A stretch of 64,000 bases of DNA, from assembly GCA_033442325.1 (NCBI GenBank), contig JAWQFM010000002.1, forward strand, positions 626,442-690,441, given 5' to 3'. Made by a program: the position numbers and the translations under genes. Of this stretch, positions 1 to 21,908 are shown piece by piece; positions within the stretch are counted from its first letter, which is position 1, and each line of letters opens with the position of its first letter. Below the pieces are notes generated by a model. That model was not told the origin of the DNA, searched no databases, and saw only the letters and a program-made list of their open reading frames with translations. This DNA is from Salpingoeca rosetta. Taxonomy: Eukaryota; Protista; Choanoflagellata.

Positions 1-142
1 TCTCCGCCCTCAATCCACCTGCGAAGCAACTCACGCTTATCATCAACATACCCGAACGCTTCACGTCCCCTCAACTCCCCCCTTCCTTTTTCTCTCCCTC
101 TCCCCCATCCGAATCCCTGCATTGGTGCACCAACAGGGTGCA

Positions 143-1708
143 GACAACCCGAAGGCAGCAGAGCGGCAGAGCAAAGCGGCCGCAGATGCAATGGCGCGTC
201 ACGGCGGTCAGCGCATGCCGTTTGCATGGGCAGCGCGACCTGTGTTCCGCTCTGATAAGGAGCTTGACACGCGTGCTGAGTTTTCGCCGCTGTTTCGCCA
301 GGATCTGGAGAAGATGCGCGAGGAAGACATGTTCCGTGTGCTGCATGAGTACCACCGCACCATGGTCAAGACCAGCACGCAGGGGAAACTCAGGTTTACG
401 ATGGTTCCCGGGGCGTTCACAGCGTCGGTCGAGCGCTACGCGTCCAACTACCCAACGGTGACCCCCTCCCTGCTGCCAGTGGCGCCGTACCCGGACAAGG
501 AACTCGCACCGCGACGCGAGGTGATGAGCTTCTATCCCCGTGCCCTGCAGCACGCCCACCTCACCTACTACGACTTTCTGTACGTGTACCCGCGCTCCGT
601 CAACTTTGCCGCCAAGCGCGTGAGCAAGAGCAGCAGTGCGCGCAATGTGCTCTGCCGCATCATGCTGCTTGACACGGACAAGTTTGCGCTCGACCCAAAT
701 CCATCGGGCGCGCCGCTTGTGTATGGCCGCTCCAACACGCAGCGCTACGTGTCGTACGCAGAGACCACGGTGTCGTACCACACGCGTCAGCCCACCTTCA
801 ACGAGGAGGTGAAGATTGCGCTGCCGCCAACGGTGAGCCGCCACCACCACCTCCTCTTCACCTTCTTCCACGTGGCAGTGAAGGAGAAGAAGAAATCCAA
901 GACAATGGTGCGGCTCGGCCACGCCGTCTTGCCGCTCGCCGTTGCGCTCACCACCAACCGCGCCCGCTTCCACATGTGCGTTGCAAGCGCCTCTGCTGGC
1001 TATGACGGCCACGATCTACCGCCAAACTATCTTGAGCAGATCAAGATGGAGGGCAAGACGCGCGACACGTATGACAAGGAGTGCGAGCAGGAGCCGCTGC
1101 CTGGCCTGCGCTGGCTGGACGACGGCAAGCCCCTGTTTGTCGTGGACACACGCTCGCACTCAACCGTCCGGCACCACGACGACCACTTGCGCAAGTTTTT
1201 CAACGCGTGTGCACGCCACGACCGCACCACGCGCTCCGACACGGAGCTGTGCAACGCCATCAAAGGGCTGCACGCCATGCAGGATGCAACGCTGTTTGGG
1301 TTTCTTCCCGTCATCTTCAACCAGCTGCTGGAGCTGCTGCCGTCGAGTCCAAGCAACCACGACGACGTGACGGCCAACGTGATCACGTATCTGCTGTATG
1401 CGGTGGGACGCATGCCCGTGACAGCCCACGAGCGCAGCCAGCTCGTGCACCAGTATGTTGAGCATGTGTTCAAGACATCTTACGACAGCACATCCATGCG
1501 CGCTGTGCACGACGGCCTTGCACATCAGCTGCTGCCCATCTTGAAGGACGGGCAGACACGCGACTCTGTTGTGCTGTATGCGTGGTTCTTTCTCCGTCTC
1601 ATCAGCAAGAGCATGGCCCAGTTTCTCTTTGAAACGAAAATGCACAAGAAACCCCGCAAGAAGCGCTTTCCTCAGGTTGGCAACGCTTTTTGTGTGTGTG
1701 TGCGTTTG

Positions 1709-3823: not shown

Positions 3824-4921
3824 AGTTGTTGTTGTTATTGTTTAAGTTGTTGTTGTTGTTGTTTAAGTTGTTGTGACATCATGACATCGCTTGTTGTCTC
3901 TCTGCATGACACTGCGCGCAGGTTTGTATGGTTATGCTGCCTTGCCATGTGCTCATCAACATCTTTGCTGTCTTGCATGTGTGTGTGTGTGTGTCGCACG
4001 TGTGCACGCACTGTGCTCATTGATTGCGCCCTATCATCCCAGGATCATTGAGGAAGGATACACAACGGTGAAGCGGAAAGGAAGCTCTGCCAGCGGTCTG
4101 ATCGATTGGCGAACACGCACACGCAGCGTTGTTGATCGTCAATCACTCTCTGCCTCCACACCAAACGGGTCCCACCTCGGCACACCCCGCAAGAAGACGT
4201 ACGAGTGTTGTATGTGTGCGTGCGTGTGTGTTGAAGGTGAATGGCTCGGTTCTCCTGCTTGCTGCTGTCCTGTTGGCTCCCGTACAACACCGCTGCCATC
4301 CAACCTCCCACCTCTCCCATCGCCACCCCCTCTTTTATCTCCAGCATTGAGCGGAGTGGGACGTCGCCTGTGCCGCCGCTTGAAGAGCAGTCGTCAACGA
4401 CTCGATTCCGCCTCTCCACCGTCGGCTCTTCCTCTGCACTCCAGGGCGCACTCTCCCCGCAGAAGGTGCCCGATTGCTCGTGCTGGTTTTGTGTTGTTGT
4501 GTTGTATTGTACTGTGCTGTCTTGTGTTGTCTTGTGTTGTCTTGTGTTGTGTTGTACTGTGTTGTGTCGTGCCGTGTGGATGGCGCTTGTTGATGACGGT
4601 GGTGACGATGTCGTACGGTTGATGGTGAGGGTTTTGTTGAATGTTGTTGCTAGTGTTTTGAGTGGATGTACACGAACAGTACCTGCCGTGTGGCGTGGAT
4701 GTTTCGCTGCTGCGTGTTCTATTTCATTTGACGGACAAATATGTTTACGTGTGTGAACGTGTGCAGATTGACAAGGCGGTGCTGCATGCCGGCCACTTCG
4801 CCATGGAGAGCGCATTCGTCGTCCTTGAGATGCTCGAACTCATCCTCCAAGGTGAACACAATATCATCTTCTTGTGGGCACGTGCCTCCGCGTATGCTTG
4901 TGTGTGTGTGGGGGGGGGTGC

Positions 4922-16784: not shown

Positions 16785-17667
16785 TGGGGGCATGTCGTGT
16801 CGTCGTGTCATGCATGCGTGCCGCGTTAGTTTTCAAGCAACAGCGACAACAACCCCTCCCCTTTGCTTTGTTCCACGCGTTGCTGTCGGCCCGCGCCCCT
16901 GGATGAATTATTTCGTCTTCAACGCCGGACGCTTTGCGAATGCAATCGCGCGTGGTGTGAATTTGGCATCAATACACAACACCACACAAACAAAGGAATT
17001 GCGCATGTATACGCGAGTGTTGGAGAATGGTTGTCTCGGATGCCATGGCTCGTCATATATACCAGGTCACGGGGGAAGAGGAGGCTGTGGTCGTTCGCAC
17101 CTGGTGATGTAGCAAGGTAGCAGCATGTTGCAGTGTTGGACCACACGAGGAGAAGCAGAAACAAAAAAGAGAGAGAGAGGGGAAAGATGGTGGGCGGGTA
17201 CCATTGCCTCTTTTCAACTTGAAACGTTTCCGTGGCCAGCGAGTCAAAGGCTTGACGCAAGGCGTAGAACGTGTGGTGCAAAAGCACGAAGACCAACACC
17301 CCCACCCCCACCCCCCGGGCGATTCCCAGCAGACAGGCAGACGAGAACCAAGTTAAAAAAAAAAAAAAAAAGACGAAGATAGCGGAATTGTTCGACATTA
17401 AATCATGGGATGGAGATGTGAGGACAGCTGGGAGTCGCGTGCACCACCAACACCTCGCGCCTGAGAAGAGCGAGACAGAAAACACACCATCCTTCATGCA
17501 ACACAATCATTGCCACAAGTGTTTATTGTGACCGGCGTGCTGCTCACAAGTTCTACACACACACCAGGCCTGTTTACTCACACAAAGCAAAGGAGAAATG
17601 CCAAAGGAAAAGAGAGTCAGCAAGAGCAATCACACAGACATACAACAACCACACATGTGTCAGTCAT

Positions 17668-17745
17668 TTACAAGTCCCCAAGCCACTCAGCCGGCACCTC
17701 AGCTGGAAGGAATCGAAACTTGTCACGTGCACCACCACCACCACC

Positions 17746-17779
<34 letters not shown>

Positions 17780-18837
17780 TAACTGCTGCTGTCACAGGCG
17801 ATGAACAGACCCGATTTCCCGCCACTCTTGAGAAGCAGGCGTGTCTCTGCAATGCACACGCTCTTGTCAATGGCCTTCACCATGTCGTACACGGTGAGCG
17901 CAGCAACGCTCACAGCGGTCATGGCCTCCATCTCCACGCCCGTCACACCTGTCGTGCGTGCGCGTGCGAGCACGACGACCTCACGGCCAGATTCCGACAG
18001 CACAACACGCATGTCGACTGCGTCGATGGGAATGTTGTGGCAGAGCGGGATGAGCGTGGCCGTGTGCTTGGCGCCACAGATGCCGGCAAAGTGTGCGATT
18101 TGCAACACGTTGCCCTTGGCAACTGCACCGTCGGAGGACAGCAACACGTCTGCCACGCCCTGCGATACACGGACACGGGATGACGCAATCGCGGTCCTGC
18201 GTTGCGGATGTTTCATCCCAACATCCACCATGCGAGCACGGCCGCCCTCGTCCACGTGTGTAAGCGTGGACTTGGCGCGACACTGCAGTCGGAACGGGGA
18301 CAGCGATGAACGGGCAAGTGGCAGCGTCGATGTTGACGGTGTCGGCAGAGACGAGGGAAGCGGTGCTGGGCAAGCTGCTGCAGACGAGGAGGAGGAGGAG
18401 GAGGAGGAGGAGGAGGTGGTGGTGGTAGCGGAAGAGTGCACCGACAACGCATGCCGTGGCCTGTGTGGCTGGTCTTGCAGGGGTGCAGGTGACGAGAAAA
18501 GGAGAAACGAAGACGCCGGTGGCAGCAAACGATACAGCGGCATGCCCACACCCGCGATGGTGTCGCCAGCCTCGTCCACGGTGGAGGAGGAGGAGGAGGA
18601 GGAAACACGAGTTGCAGATGAAGGCGACGAGGGCGTGGTGGCACGACGAACGAGGGGCGAGACGCAAGAAGACACGAGTGGGGACGGTAACGACGACGAC
18701 GACGACAATGACGGTAACGGCCGAGCAGAAGTAGGATGGGTCGATTCTGCACAGTGAGGGCGGGGGGGGGGGAATGCAAGCAAGGAGACACCACAGTGAG
18801 AAACGGGTTGGCGTGGCCTGGTAAGGGCAGTATACAC
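17668..18837 (-). CDS. MOCS1: MoaC / MOCS1B (cPMP synthase) exon with a long S/P-rich N-terminal linker
   Basis: LTHVDEGGRARMVDVG, GAKHTATLIPLCH, TGVEMEAMTAVSVAALTVYDMVKA, KSGGKSG. Candidate phase-0 splice acceptor at 18837. Confidence 0.92.
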
Positions 18838-19109
18838 CTGTACAAGACGGTTTGAAGCAACAAGAAGGGGGCGGGGGTGTCGGGGGGAGGGAGGGATCGA
18901 AGAAAAGGGGTAGTGGTCAGCGAAGGAAGTCGACACCAAAGACAACAAGTGGAGAGGAGAGGCGGGAGGAGACAGAGGAGAGGTGGGCAAGAGATCGATC
19001 GCGAAGCCACAGCACCACTCAGCGTGGTTGAAACATGAAACACGACACGGCACAGCATACTCACATTAGTGAAGCAGAGCAAGCTACTGGGAAGAGAAGC
19101 GCAACAGCG

Positions 19110-21784
19110 TCAGCCGCCAATAAGGATCATGGGCCGATTTTTCCTCTTTGCCAACTCAAACATGCCTGCATGCTGCTTCTTCTTCCGCTTCACAGCCGCG
19201 TCGATCTCACGAATCGTCTCCTCGTCGTTCTCGCTCCGCCGCAGCGCGTGCTTGAGATCAACCTCCGTACTGCCAAATAGGCACACCTGCAGACGCGTGT
19301 ACATGGCGTATGCGGGGAAGTGCGTGTGTGTGTGTGTGTGGGGGTGTGTGTGTGGGTGAGCGGGAGTGTGGGGAGGGAGTGTGGGGAGGGAGTGTGGGGA
19401 GGGAAGTGTGGGAAGGGGTGGCATGTACACGCCACAGCGTACAACGAGGAACAACAAGCATGTACAGCACGAAGCGCAGCCGAGAGCACGCACACACAGG
19501 GTGGACAGATGAACACACGCACGAGTGGATGAGTGGATGAATGAGCAAACAAGCAAATGAGCAAACAAGCAATGAATCAACCAAACACGCAATCAATCAA
19601 ATAAGTAAACAAGACAGCGCCGGACCTTCAATTGGCCGTTTGCAGTGATGCGCAGGCGATTACAGGAGCCACAAAAGTGCTCGCTCATGGATGTAATGAA
19701 ACCAATTCGTCCCGCATGGCCGGGCACCCACCACGCCTGGCAGCGACAATGGTGGCGGTGGTGGTGGCGGCGGCGGTGGTGGTGAGACTGACGACGGTGA
19801 AACAGCAGACAGTCACACACACACACACATGCACACACACACACATGCACACACACCCACATGCACACAACACACGCACACCTTTGACGTGTCATTGGGA
19901 TGATCTGAGAGGCGAGTGAGGGTGAACCGCTGCTCAATCCTCTCCAGCATCTCTTTGTACGACACAAACCGGTCCATGTTCCATCGGTTGCCTGCAGGCA
20001 AGATGGTCAGCGCAAGCGTGTATGTCGAGTGAGTGGGAGCGGGGAAACCACGAGGGAGTATGTAAAGGAGGGAAGCAAACGCAAATGGGCGAACAGTCAA
20101 CGTGTATGCATCTCGAAGAGCACACGTACTCATACGCAGACACAAACACATGCGCGCACACATGCGCAGACACAGAGACACAGACACACTACACACACAC
20201 GCACACACGCGAACAATTTGACTGACCATCAAAGGGCATGTATTCGATGAAGCGAACATCAACCGGCTTCTCGCGCGTCCACTCGACAAAGTCGAGCAGC
20301 TCATCATCGTTGACGTTGCGGGTCAGCACGACGTTGATTTTTGGGGTCAAGCCAGCATCAATGGCCGCATCAATCCCACGGAACACCCGGTCCAGCCCTG
20401 GCGCCCGGGGCGGGGGAATATCAACAATGGGCATTGTGAACATGCAATGGCACCGCTGCGGCTGTGCACGTCATACATGCAACACACACACACACAAACA
20501 CACAAACAAACAAACAAACAAACAAACAAACAAACAAACAAACAAACAAACAAGCAAACAAACAACCCCACGCGCAAACCTCTGCGTCTGGAGATGATGT
20601 TGAACTTGTGCTCGTGGAAGGTGTCGAGGCTGACGTTCAAATGGGTGAGGCCGGCATCCTTCAGGGCATCCAGCTTGCGTGCCAGCGTCAAGCCATTGGT
20701 TGTGATGCCAACACTCTCAATGCCTGGCATGCCTCGGAACTCCCCTGTGCGCGTGCGTGTGTGAGTATGTGATTATATGTGATTATGAACTCAAAAGGAA
20801 CACTCATTTGCGTACACATGCAGCCCACACATACGCACACACACGCACCCCCACACATACGCATACACATGCACCCCACACATACGCATACACACATGCA
20901 CACACGCATGCACATAGACGCGTGTGTACAGGGTGTGCAGACATGTCCCACGGGCAAATCGCAGCCTAAGGAAACGTACGAATGAGGTCGGAGAGCTGGG
21001 GATACAGGAGGGGCTCTCCACCTGTGAGTCGGATCTTGCTGACGCCGTTTGAAGCGAAGATGCGGGCCAATCGCACCAGCTCATCAAAGGTGAGCAGCTC
21101 GTCCTTTGGTGACAGCTGCACGCCTTCCTCAGGCATGCAGTACTGGCCTGCTCAACACGAAACGCACATAATACACAACACATAGACACAGACACAGACA
21201 CACACACATACAACAAAATACATTGACACATACACAGACAGACAGACGCAGACACAGACACGCAAGCAATTCACAAAACACAAAATACACACACACACAT
21301 GCAATGCATCTCGATTAGAAAGTGCGAAAGACCAGCAAGGTGCTGCGATCAGGAGCACACGAATAGCAACAAAGAGCAACACAAAGAGACCCGCAACGCT
21401 GCTGAACTCACATCGGAGGTTGCAGCGCTCTGTGAGGCTGATGCGCAAATAGCTGTGCTGGCGGCCGAACAAATCCGTAAGCACCGACGACACACGGGAC
21501 TGCTCTTGTTGAGTTTGGTGTGCTGGTCCTTCCTTCTGCGAATGGCGTTGCCCATCTGTGGCTTCTTGGTGTTGATCCGGCTCCGGCATCGCAGAGCCAT
21601 GCTGAAAGCGCGCGCATTGGCGCACTGCAGTAGCGGACAAAGTGGCGGCGAGGTTCACCGGCTGTTGGCGTGCCATGAGGGCTGCTGCCGCACCAGCCCA
21701 CCTGTGCATGGTGTTGGTGGTGCTGGTCATCGTCAGAAAGGGGCGCATGACGCCTCGTCCTCCACAACAGCACGCCTGCATCAT
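19110..21784 (-). CDS. MOCS1: MoaA / MOCS1A radical-SAM GTP 3',8-cyclase, multi-exon, with a mitochondrial-type N-terminal extension
   Basis: [27 protein letters not shown] (CxxxCxxC), [35 protein letters not shown] and the C-terminal RPMILIGG* double-glycine end. Confidence 0.95.
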
Positions 21785-21908
21785 TTTTGCGCGAGGTGGC
21801 GTCACACGAAAGAAAAATATCCACCACACCCACAAATCTTCAGGACTTCCGCCAAACAAGAGACAAGACGAGAAGAAGATGAGGTGTGGAAGGACGATCG
21901 CACTGGCT

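What the first reader, a model, noticed from the sequence alone, without database searches (positions are those of the whole stretch)
17668..19626. Bicistronic MOCS1: MoaA and MoaC are in one frame, separated by a single TGA in a skippable exon
Seen: MoaA ends ILIGG-TGA (19112-19110). The frame stays open for 15 codons (RCCASLPSSLLCFTN) up to a consensus GTGAGT donor at 19064. A phase-0 acceptor at 18837 enters the MoaC ORF in frame. The stop-bearing exon (19286-19065, 222 nt) is phase 0 on both sides, so skipping it gives a MOCS1AB fusion. The stop also sits in the leaky TGA-C context. Established: animal MOCS1 uses this arrangement because MoaA needs a free C-terminal GG, and MoaC is made from stop-skipping splice forms. 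Inference: the arrangement predates animals and MoaC arises here by exon skipping, readthrough or reinitiation.
Basis: partly seen in the sequence, partly recalled or inferred. Interest (0 to 1): 0.75.

Follow-up and report, generated by a model that had tools for sequence, protein, structure and literature searches.

The report
Choanoflagellate MOCS1-like MoaA–MoaC tandem locus
In the choanoflagellate Salpingoeca rosetta, the two enzymes of the first molybdenum-cofactor step lie head to tail as in the animal MOCS1 gene, but this layout is already known outside animals and I got no RNA data to test the proposed exon skipping.

Summary
The window is Salpingoeca rosetta. MoaA has 7 exons and ends ILIGG-TGA at 19112-19110. 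Fifteen open codons lead to a GTGAGT at 19064. An AG|G acceptor at 18837 enters the single-copy MoaC ORF in frame. The stop-bearing exon is 222 nt with phase 0 at both ends.

The two frame coincidences have about a 1/9 chance, and at least three other in-frame routes exist. GenBank annotates two separate genes.

Comparison supports a MOCS1-type gene in choanoflagellates:
- Barroeca has the two genes as neighbours.
- Salpingoeca infusionum and Hartaetosiga transcripts encode MoaA with a free GG.
- Choanoeca perplexa and C. flexa transcripts encode MoaA-MoaC fusions. They leave MoaA right after QHA(G), the same codon as in Drosophila and Trichoplax.

S. rosetta has no intron at that codon, so its route must differ if it makes a fusion. 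That the arrangement predates animals is already published (Neurospora nit-7; Dictyostelium).

Verdict: a probable new member of a known kind, with the mechanism unproven. The scan had not noted this before.

The parts
21412..21709 (-). MoaA exon 1 coding part (ATG 21709; presequence-like N-terminus; start of the CNLRCQYC radical-SAM motif)
   Evidence: Its peptide is found at position 0 of GenBank protein P0121; donor GAT|GTGAGT
20980..21147 (-). MoaA exon 2
   Evidence: Radical_SAM match; peptide matches P0121
20580..20744 (-). MoaA exon 3
   Evidence: Radical_SAM match; peptide matches P0121
20227..20397 (-). MoaA exon 4
19882..19991 (-). MoaA exon 5
   Evidence: Mob_synth_C match
19626..19736 (-). 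MoaA exon 6 ([17 protein letters not shown]); ends in phase 0, donor AAG|GTCCGG
   Evidence: Mob_synth_C E=7.6e-14
19110..19286 (-). MoaA exon 7 coding part (VCLFG...[24 protein letters not shown]) plus TGA at 19112-19110. It has no intron at the QHA|G codon, where animals and Choanoeca splice
19065..19109 (-). 45 nt after the stop, open in the MoaA frame (15 codons). The stop lies under 50 nt from the putative exon end
18838..19064 (-). Candidate intron (GTGAGT...TACAG, 227 nt). Its length, G-to-C skew polarity and lack of codon periodicity resemble the six MoaA introns
   Evidence: its use is not shown
18232..18837 (-). Ser/Pro/Thr-rich linker ORF in the MoaC frame. Candidate acceptors lie at 18837 (phase 0), 18817 (phase 2), 18746 (phase 1) and 18377 (phase 1). 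The GenBank ATG is at 18543-18541. An R-x-x|S-T motif, like a mitochondrial processing peptidase (MPP) site, sits just before STLTHVD
   Evidence: Codon-position periodicity is present from about 18746 downward, which is upstream of the annotated ATG
17818..18231 (-). MoaC domain
   Evidence: PF01967 E=8.6e-46, full-length match 1-136/136; the only MoaC match in the genome
17668..17817 (-). MoaC C-terminal tail (poly-Asp/poly-Gly, then ...PAEWLGDL) and TAA
   Evidence: The end motif P-x-EWL is shared with Barroeca monosierra MoaC
19162..19211 (-). Alternative candidate donors inside exon 7, upstream of the stop: TTC|GTGAGA (exon end 19211, phase 1), CAG|GCATGT (exon end 19166, phase 1, exactly at QHA|G), CAT|GTTTGA (exon end 19162, phase 2)
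   Evidence: their use is not shown

Best explanation
This is the Salpingoeca rosetta orthologue of MOCS1/nit-7. It is most likely one transcription unit. The full-length message yields MoaA (GTP 3',8-cyclase) with its required free Gly-Gly end. A minor splice form removes GG and TGA and joins the MoaA reading frame to the Ser/Pro-rich linker and MoaC. In that case MoaC would enter mitochondria as a fusion and be released by cleavage at the R-x-x|ST site just before its domain, as in human and Neurospora.

Shown: the two ORFs, their order and strand, single-copy status, the splice-site-like sequences and their frames, and the existence of fusion and MoaA-only transcripts in other choanoflagellates.

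Inferred: a common transcript in S. rosetta, and which junction is used. My split within this explanation is:
- an internal phase-1 donor (19166 GC, or 19211 GT) to 18746, about 0.2;
- other routes, about 0.1.
For: - Pfam finds Radical_SAM and Mob_synth_C on exons 2-7 and a full MoaC domain 0.9 kb downstream on the same strand.
- Both are single copy in the 55 Mb genome.
- Barroeca monosierra MoaC and MoaA are consecutive entries P004657 and P004658.
- Choanoeca perplexa (548 aa) and C. flexa (564 aa) transcript ORFs carry Radical_SAM, Mob_synth_C and MoaC in one protein. They diverge from MoaA right after QHA(G), as do Drosophila and Trichoplax.
- The Trichoplax genome shows the donor CAG|GTATCA at that codon, followed by a small exon encoding [18 protein letters not shown]-stop.
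- The MoaC frame has no ATG upstream of 18543. Even so, codon-position periodicity of the same kind as in the annotated linker extends up to about 18746 (p=1.4e-4; p=0.06 with triplet runs masked). The segment 19064-18838 is aperiodic like real introns.
- The candidate intron has the length and skew polarity of the gene's other introns.
- Several in-frame routes exist.
- Literature: human type I-III forms (10.1101/429183); nit-7 retained intron (PMC7232280).
Against: - There is no RNA evidence of any kind for S. rosetta.
- GenBank models two genes, MoaA of 399 aa and MoaC of 302 aa starting at ATG 18543.
- S. rosetta lacks both junctions that animals use. QHA|G has no intron and offers only a GC dinucleotide. 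The GG codons are GGC GGC, not G|GT.
- In-frame donor/acceptor pairs are available in every phase, so being in frame is weak evidence.
- Periodicity is partly due to the (GTC)5 and (TCC)7 runs.
- A divergent gene starts only 170 nt from the MoaA ATG, so promoters here can be very short. The 570 nt between the TGA and ATG 18543 could therefore hold a 3' end plus a promoter.
Confidence: 0.5

Rival explanations
1. There are two independent genes, as annotated in GenBank. After losing the ancestral intron at QHA|G, the S. rosetta lineage uncoupled the cistrons. MoaC would then be transcribed from its own promoter in the CT-rich spacer and translated from ATG 18543, with its own N-terminal targeting sequence, as with plant cnx2/cnx3.
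For: - GenBank has separate models, P0121 and P0001.
- GeneMark also models two genes in Barroeca.
- ATG 18543 has G at -3, and no ATG lies between the TGA and it once 19064-18838 is removed.
- S. rosetta lacks the conserved GT donors at QHA|G and at GG.
- The Hartaetosiga MoaA transcript contig ends 123 nt after its stop, judging by the ORF coordinates, so monocistronic MoaA messages may exist in choanoflagellates.
- Compact promoters occur at this locus.
Against: - Every opisthokont and amoebozoan examined in the literature expresses MoaC from a fusion (10.1101/429183, PMC7232280), and so do two Choanoeca species.
- Codon-like periodicity extends about 200 nt upstream of ATG 18543.
- The peptide from 18543 is proline-rich (7 Pro in 30 residues), which is atypical for an amphipathic presequence (by eye).
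- Gene predictors split bicistronic loci by default, so the annotation is weak evidence.
Confidence: 0.3
2. One mature mRNA makes both proteins without alternative splicing. After removal of 19064-18838, the TGA is the only stop between MoaA and MoaC. Occasional readthrough of UGA-C would give the fusion; much less likely, reinitiation at AUG 18543 would give MoaC alone.
For: The splice 19065>18837 would be in frame, and the stop is TGA followed by C. UGA-C is the leakiest tetranucleotide in mammals (established knowledge). The stop lies 45 nt from the putative junction, within the distance that escapes junction-dependent mRNA decay in animals (inference).
Against: - Being in frame is a 1/3 chance.
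- There is no known readthrough motif beyond the +4 C.
- No MOCS1-type gene is reported to use readthrough, and in human type I mRNA the second ORF is not translated (10.1101/429183).
- Reinitiation after a 399-codon ORF is not expected.
- A readthrough fusion would bury the GG, but that is also true of splice fusions.
Confidence: 0.07

Closest known systems
Human MOCS1 (type I bicistronic; type II/III MOCS1AB splice forms)
   Same: MoaA ORF ends in GG plus a stop. MoaC ORF follows downstream on the same strand behind a roughly 100-residue-or-longer linker. The stop sits close to the end of a putative exon. A whole-exon skip would be in frame, as in type III.
   Different: The human stop-bearing exon 9 is the short exon that follows ...QHAG, and type II uses a donor just upstream of the GG and the stop, 15 nt before the end of exon 9 (10.1101/429183). 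In S. rosetta the stop-bearing exon also carries VCLFG...QHAG, with no intron at QHA|G and no GT at the GG codons. No transcripts are shown for S. rosetta.
Neurospora crassa nit-7 (and Aspergillus cnxABC)
   Same: One locus. GG and the stop lie in a stretch that is either retained (giving NIT-7A) or spliced out (giving the NIT-7AB fusion, cleaved after import) (PMC7232280). A donor inside S. rosetta exon 7 (19166 or 19211) joined to 18746 would work in exactly this way.
   Different: nit-7 has a single intron and experimentally shown splice forms. The S. rosetta donors are only candidates, one of them a GC donor.
Choanoeca perplexa / C. flexa MOCS1AB-type transcripts; Trichoplax and Drosophila Mocs1
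   Same: These are the closest relatives with fusion ORFs. Same domain order, and an R-x-x|S(T/S)L(T/S)H motif before MoaC.
   Different: Their fusion junction is the phase-1 site at QHA|G. S. rosetta and its near relative Barroeca are modelled as two genes.
Plant cnx2 / cnx3
   Same: This is the state S. rosetta would resemble if the GenBank two-gene model is right.
   Different: The plant genes are at separate loci (PMC7232280). Here the two ORFs are 0.6-0.9 kb apart on one strand.

Membership tests
MOCS1/nit-7-type cPMP synthase gene (one locus, MoaA with free GG plus MoaC made as a stop-skipping fusion) | MoaA ORF ending in Gly-Gly immediately followed by a stop | tested here: met
   ILIGG-TGA at 19112-19110. 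The same end occurs in mouse, Actinia, Barroeca and S. infusionum.
MOCS1/nit-7-type cPMP synthase gene (one locus, MoaA with free GG plus MoaC made as a stop-skipping fusion) | MoaC ORF directly downstream on the same strand, with no other MoaC in the genome | tested here: met
   PF01967 E=8.6e-46 at 18231-17818; one genomic match.
MOCS1/nit-7-type cPMP synthase gene (one locus, MoaA with free GG plus MoaC made as a stop-skipping fusion) | A transcript that spans both ORFs | not testable with these tools
No transcript-derived S. rosetta proteins appeared in three word searches.
MOCS1/nit-7-type cPMP synthase gene (one locus, MoaA with free GG plus MoaC made as a stop-skipping fusion) | A splice form that removes GG and the stop and fuses the frames | tested here: inconclusive
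   In-frame routes exist on paper: 19626>18837, 19166>18746, 19211>18746 and 19162>18817. None is observed.
MOCS1/nit-7-type cPMP synthase gene (one locus, MoaA with free GG plus MoaC made as a stop-skipping fusion) | Animal/Choanoeca junction: phase-1 GT donor in the Gly codon of QHAG, or at the first Gly of GG | tested here: not met
   S. rosetta reads GCA G|GC ATG and ATT G|GC GGC TGA, with no intron and no GT. Compare Trichoplax CAG|GTATCA.
MoaA / GTP 3',8-cyclase | Radical-SAM CxxxCxxC motif, Mob_synth_C domain with the C-terminal cluster cysteines, GG tail | tested here: met
   CNLRCQYC, FCGSCN...VCLFG and ILIGG are in P0121, which the seven exons reproduce exactly.
MoaC (PF01967) | Full-length match above the Pfam cut-off | tested here: met
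   155.8 bits against a cut-off of 27, profile positions 1-136 of 136.

The most novel reading that the evidence does not exclude
S. rosetta lost the ancestral intron at QHA|G and now makes MoaC from a single mature mRNA. After in-frame removal of 19064-18838, the UGA-C is the only stop between MoaA and MoaC, and programmed readthrough yields the MoaA-MoaC fusion. Translational recoding would thus replace the alternative splicing used by animals and fungi.
Probability: 0.06. Interest if true: 0.65.

Novelty: new member of a known kind. Interest (0 to 1): 0.3.

Why it matters
If confirmed, it would correct a two-gene annotation in the main choanoflagellate model. It would also show how a lineage that lost the ancestral stop-skipping intron still couples MoaA, which needs a free GG, with MoaC, which elsewhere is imported as a fusion. 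The broader point, that the MOCS1 arrangement is older than animals, is already in the literature for fungi and Dictyostelium. The new comparative detail here is that Choanoeca fusion transcripts use the same QHA|G junction as Drosophila and Trichoplax. That places this junction no later than the common ancestor of choanoflagellates and animals.

Tried and rejected
- **Reads.** Local scripts did read them: searches counted base composition and showed splice-site contexts for the whole of intron 2, and one search compared the window with L001 as a plain string. Later scripts left those places out.
- **Word shares.** The shares of 0.53-0.60 fit 'exons only', but the run type is a guess, so I draw nothing from them.
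- **Transcript-derived proteins.** I looked for S. rosetta ORFs from Logan contigs in three word searches and found none.
- **Joined model.** Exons were searched by reference, and the GenBank protein id P0121 was used instead.
- **Poly(A) signal.** No AATAAA-like hexamer occurs in the 566 nt after the MoaA stop. The neighbouring genes lack canonical signals too, so this is uninformative.
- **Linker similarity to Barroeca.** The best match (FPPPRPHCAESTH against FTHSTPHCVYKTH) has E=0.13, which is not significant.
- **Frameshifting.** Excluded, because the MoaC frame has a TAA at 19068-19066, downstream of the TGA.
- **Papers.** Gray and Nicholls 2000 (PMC1369970) is not held. No paper in the library mentions both MOCS1 and choanoflagellates.
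- **Monosiga brevicollis.** It did not appear among the listed hits, so its locus could not be compared.

Full report
**Identity of the locus**

The window is Salpingoeca rosetta. The 13 kb around the finding is identical to GenBank GL832958.1.

On the minus strand, seven exons reproduce the GenBank MoaA protein P0121 (399 aa) exactly, checked exon by exon:
- 21709-21412
- 21147-20980
- 20744-20580
- 20397-20227
- 19991-19882
- 19736-19626
- 19286-19113, followed by TGA at 19112-19110

Pfam finds Radical_SAM and Mob_synth_C on these exons. It also finds a complete MoaC domain (E=8.6e-46) at 18231-17818 inside an ORF open from 19065 to 17671. MoaC and Mob_synth_C each occur once in the 55 Mb genome.

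**The observation**

- ILIGG-TGA-C.
- 15 open codons to 19065.
- GTGAGT at 19064.
- TACAG|G giving an exon start at 18837, in phase 0 of the MoaC ORF.
- A 222-nt stop-bearing exon, phase 0 on both sides.
- Exon 6 ending in phase 0, at 19626 rather than about 19627.

The stretch 19064-18838 also looks like an intron of this gene:
- It is 227 nt long; the six MoaA introns range from 145 to 339 nt.
- It is G-over-C rich at the 5' end and C-over-G rich at the 3' end, like four of the five introns I measured.
- It shows no codon-position periodicity.

Three cautions apply:
- On genomic DNA the two ORFs are in different frames.
- This A-poor stretch is open in all three frames and has only 17 AG dinucleotides, with a plausible acceptor in every phase.

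Other in-frame routes therefore exist on paper:
- 19166>18746, a GC donor CAG|GCATGT.
- 19211>18746, donor TTC|GTGAGA.
- 19162>18817.

**What could not be done**

The decisive test was RNA reads. I worked beside those places and sent none of their letters to any search tool. Local scripts did read them: searches counted composition over the whole of intron 2, and one search compared the window with L001 as a plain string.

No transcript-derived S. rosetta protein turned up in three word searches. There is therefore no evidence here that any of the proposed junctions is used.

**Comparative evidence**

GenBank models two genes: MoaA, and a 302-aa MoaC starting at ATG 18543.

EukProt identifiers show the following:
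- The closest relative, Barroeca monosierra, has MoaC and MoaA as consecutive entries P004657 and P004658.
- Salpingoeca infusionum and Hartaetosiga balthica transcript ORFs encode MoaA alone, ending in GG.
- Choanoeca perplexa (548 aa) and C. flexa (564 aa) transcript ORFs are MoaA-linker-MoaC fusions.

In alignment A2, the Choanoeca, Drosophila and Trichoplax fusions leave the MoaA sequence right after QHA(G). The Actinia and shark fusions leave it at ILI(G), just before GG.

The Trichoplax genome shows the corresponding phase-1 donor (CAG|GTATCA), followed by a small exon encoding [18 protein letters not shown]-stop. This matches the published human scheme, in which type III skips exon 9 and type II uses a donor 15 nt before its end (10.1101/429183).

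So choanoflagellates do have the animal-type system. S. rosetta differs: it has no intron at QHA|G, and its GG codons are GGC GGC.

**Hints on where coding starts**

The same periodicity (C at codon position 2) seen in the annotated linker 18543-18232 (p=6e-5) is also present in 18746-18544 (p=1.4e-4; p=0.06 after masking the triplet runs). It is absent from 18837-18747, though that stretch is only 91 nt.

This suggests translation upstream of the annotated ATG, hence a fusion. It mildly favours the phase-1 acceptor at 18746. Against that, the acceptor has A rather than the G that follows AG in all six MoaA introns. A non-significant match to Barroeca (E=0.13) also spans it. I leave the route open.

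Just before the MoaC domain, S. rosetta (RAK|STLTH), Choanoeca (RSY|STLSH; RFN|SSLTH) and Barroeca (RLM|SSLSH) share an R-x-x|S motif. It resembles a cleavage site of the mitochondrial processing peptidase (MPP) and would fit release of MoaC from a precursor as in human and Neurospora (by eye; 10.1101/429183; PMC7232280).

**Verdict**

- One MOCS1/nit-7-type gene that makes MoaA, plus a spliced MoaA-MoaC fusion: about 0.5.
- Two independent genes, as annotated: about 0.3.
- Readthrough or reinitiation on one mRNA: about 0.07.

The claim that the arrangement predates animals is correct but already published for fungi and Dictyostelium. What is new is modest: the S. rosetta locus is probably mis-split in GenBank, it lacks the ancestral junction, and Choanoeca transcripts place the QHA|G junction before the animal-choanoflagellate split.

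Noticed in passing
window 17461-17697 (minus strand): The GenBank MoaC model P0001 splices out 17697-17461 (donor GAG|GTGCCG, which lacks the G at +5 seen in all six MoaA introns) and ends ...ARGVGGARDSQLSSHLHPMI. The unspliced reading ends ...LPAEVPAEWLGDL-TAA at 17668. Its P-x-EWL end is shared with Barroeca MoaC (...FPQEWLEKI), so the unspliced end is probably the conserved one.
   Followed up: partly
window 19287-21411, the six MoaA introns: All six donors are GTNNG, and all six acceptors are CAG followed by G. Of the five introns measured, four switch from G-over-C rich at the 5' end to C-over-G rich at the 3' end.
   Followed up: partly
L006 about 4380-4800 (Amphimedon queenslandica GL345193.1): In this sponge, the small exon after ...HHAG reads [17 protein letters not shown] and then runs on without a stop. 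The RefSeq model splices ILIG|GYHTN... straight into MoaC. No GG-stop form is visible in the genomic sequence I read.
   Followed up: no
L001 2665-2835 = window about 21709-21879: An S1-domain gene on the other strand starts only about 170 nt from the MoaA ATG, giving a very compact divergent promoter region.
   Followed up: no
window 17730-17790 (minus strand): The MoaC tail carries DDDDDD followed by GGGGGGGGGG, encoded by (GAT)n(GGT)n. Barroeca lacks it.
   Followed up: no
EukProt EP00055_Hartaetosiga_balthica_P003035 (P0201): The MoaA-only ORF lies at 124-1344(-) of its transcript contig. Only 123 nt therefore follow the stop, so this contig cannot hold a MoaC ORF. This may be a monocistronic MoaA message or an assembly break.
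   Followed up: no
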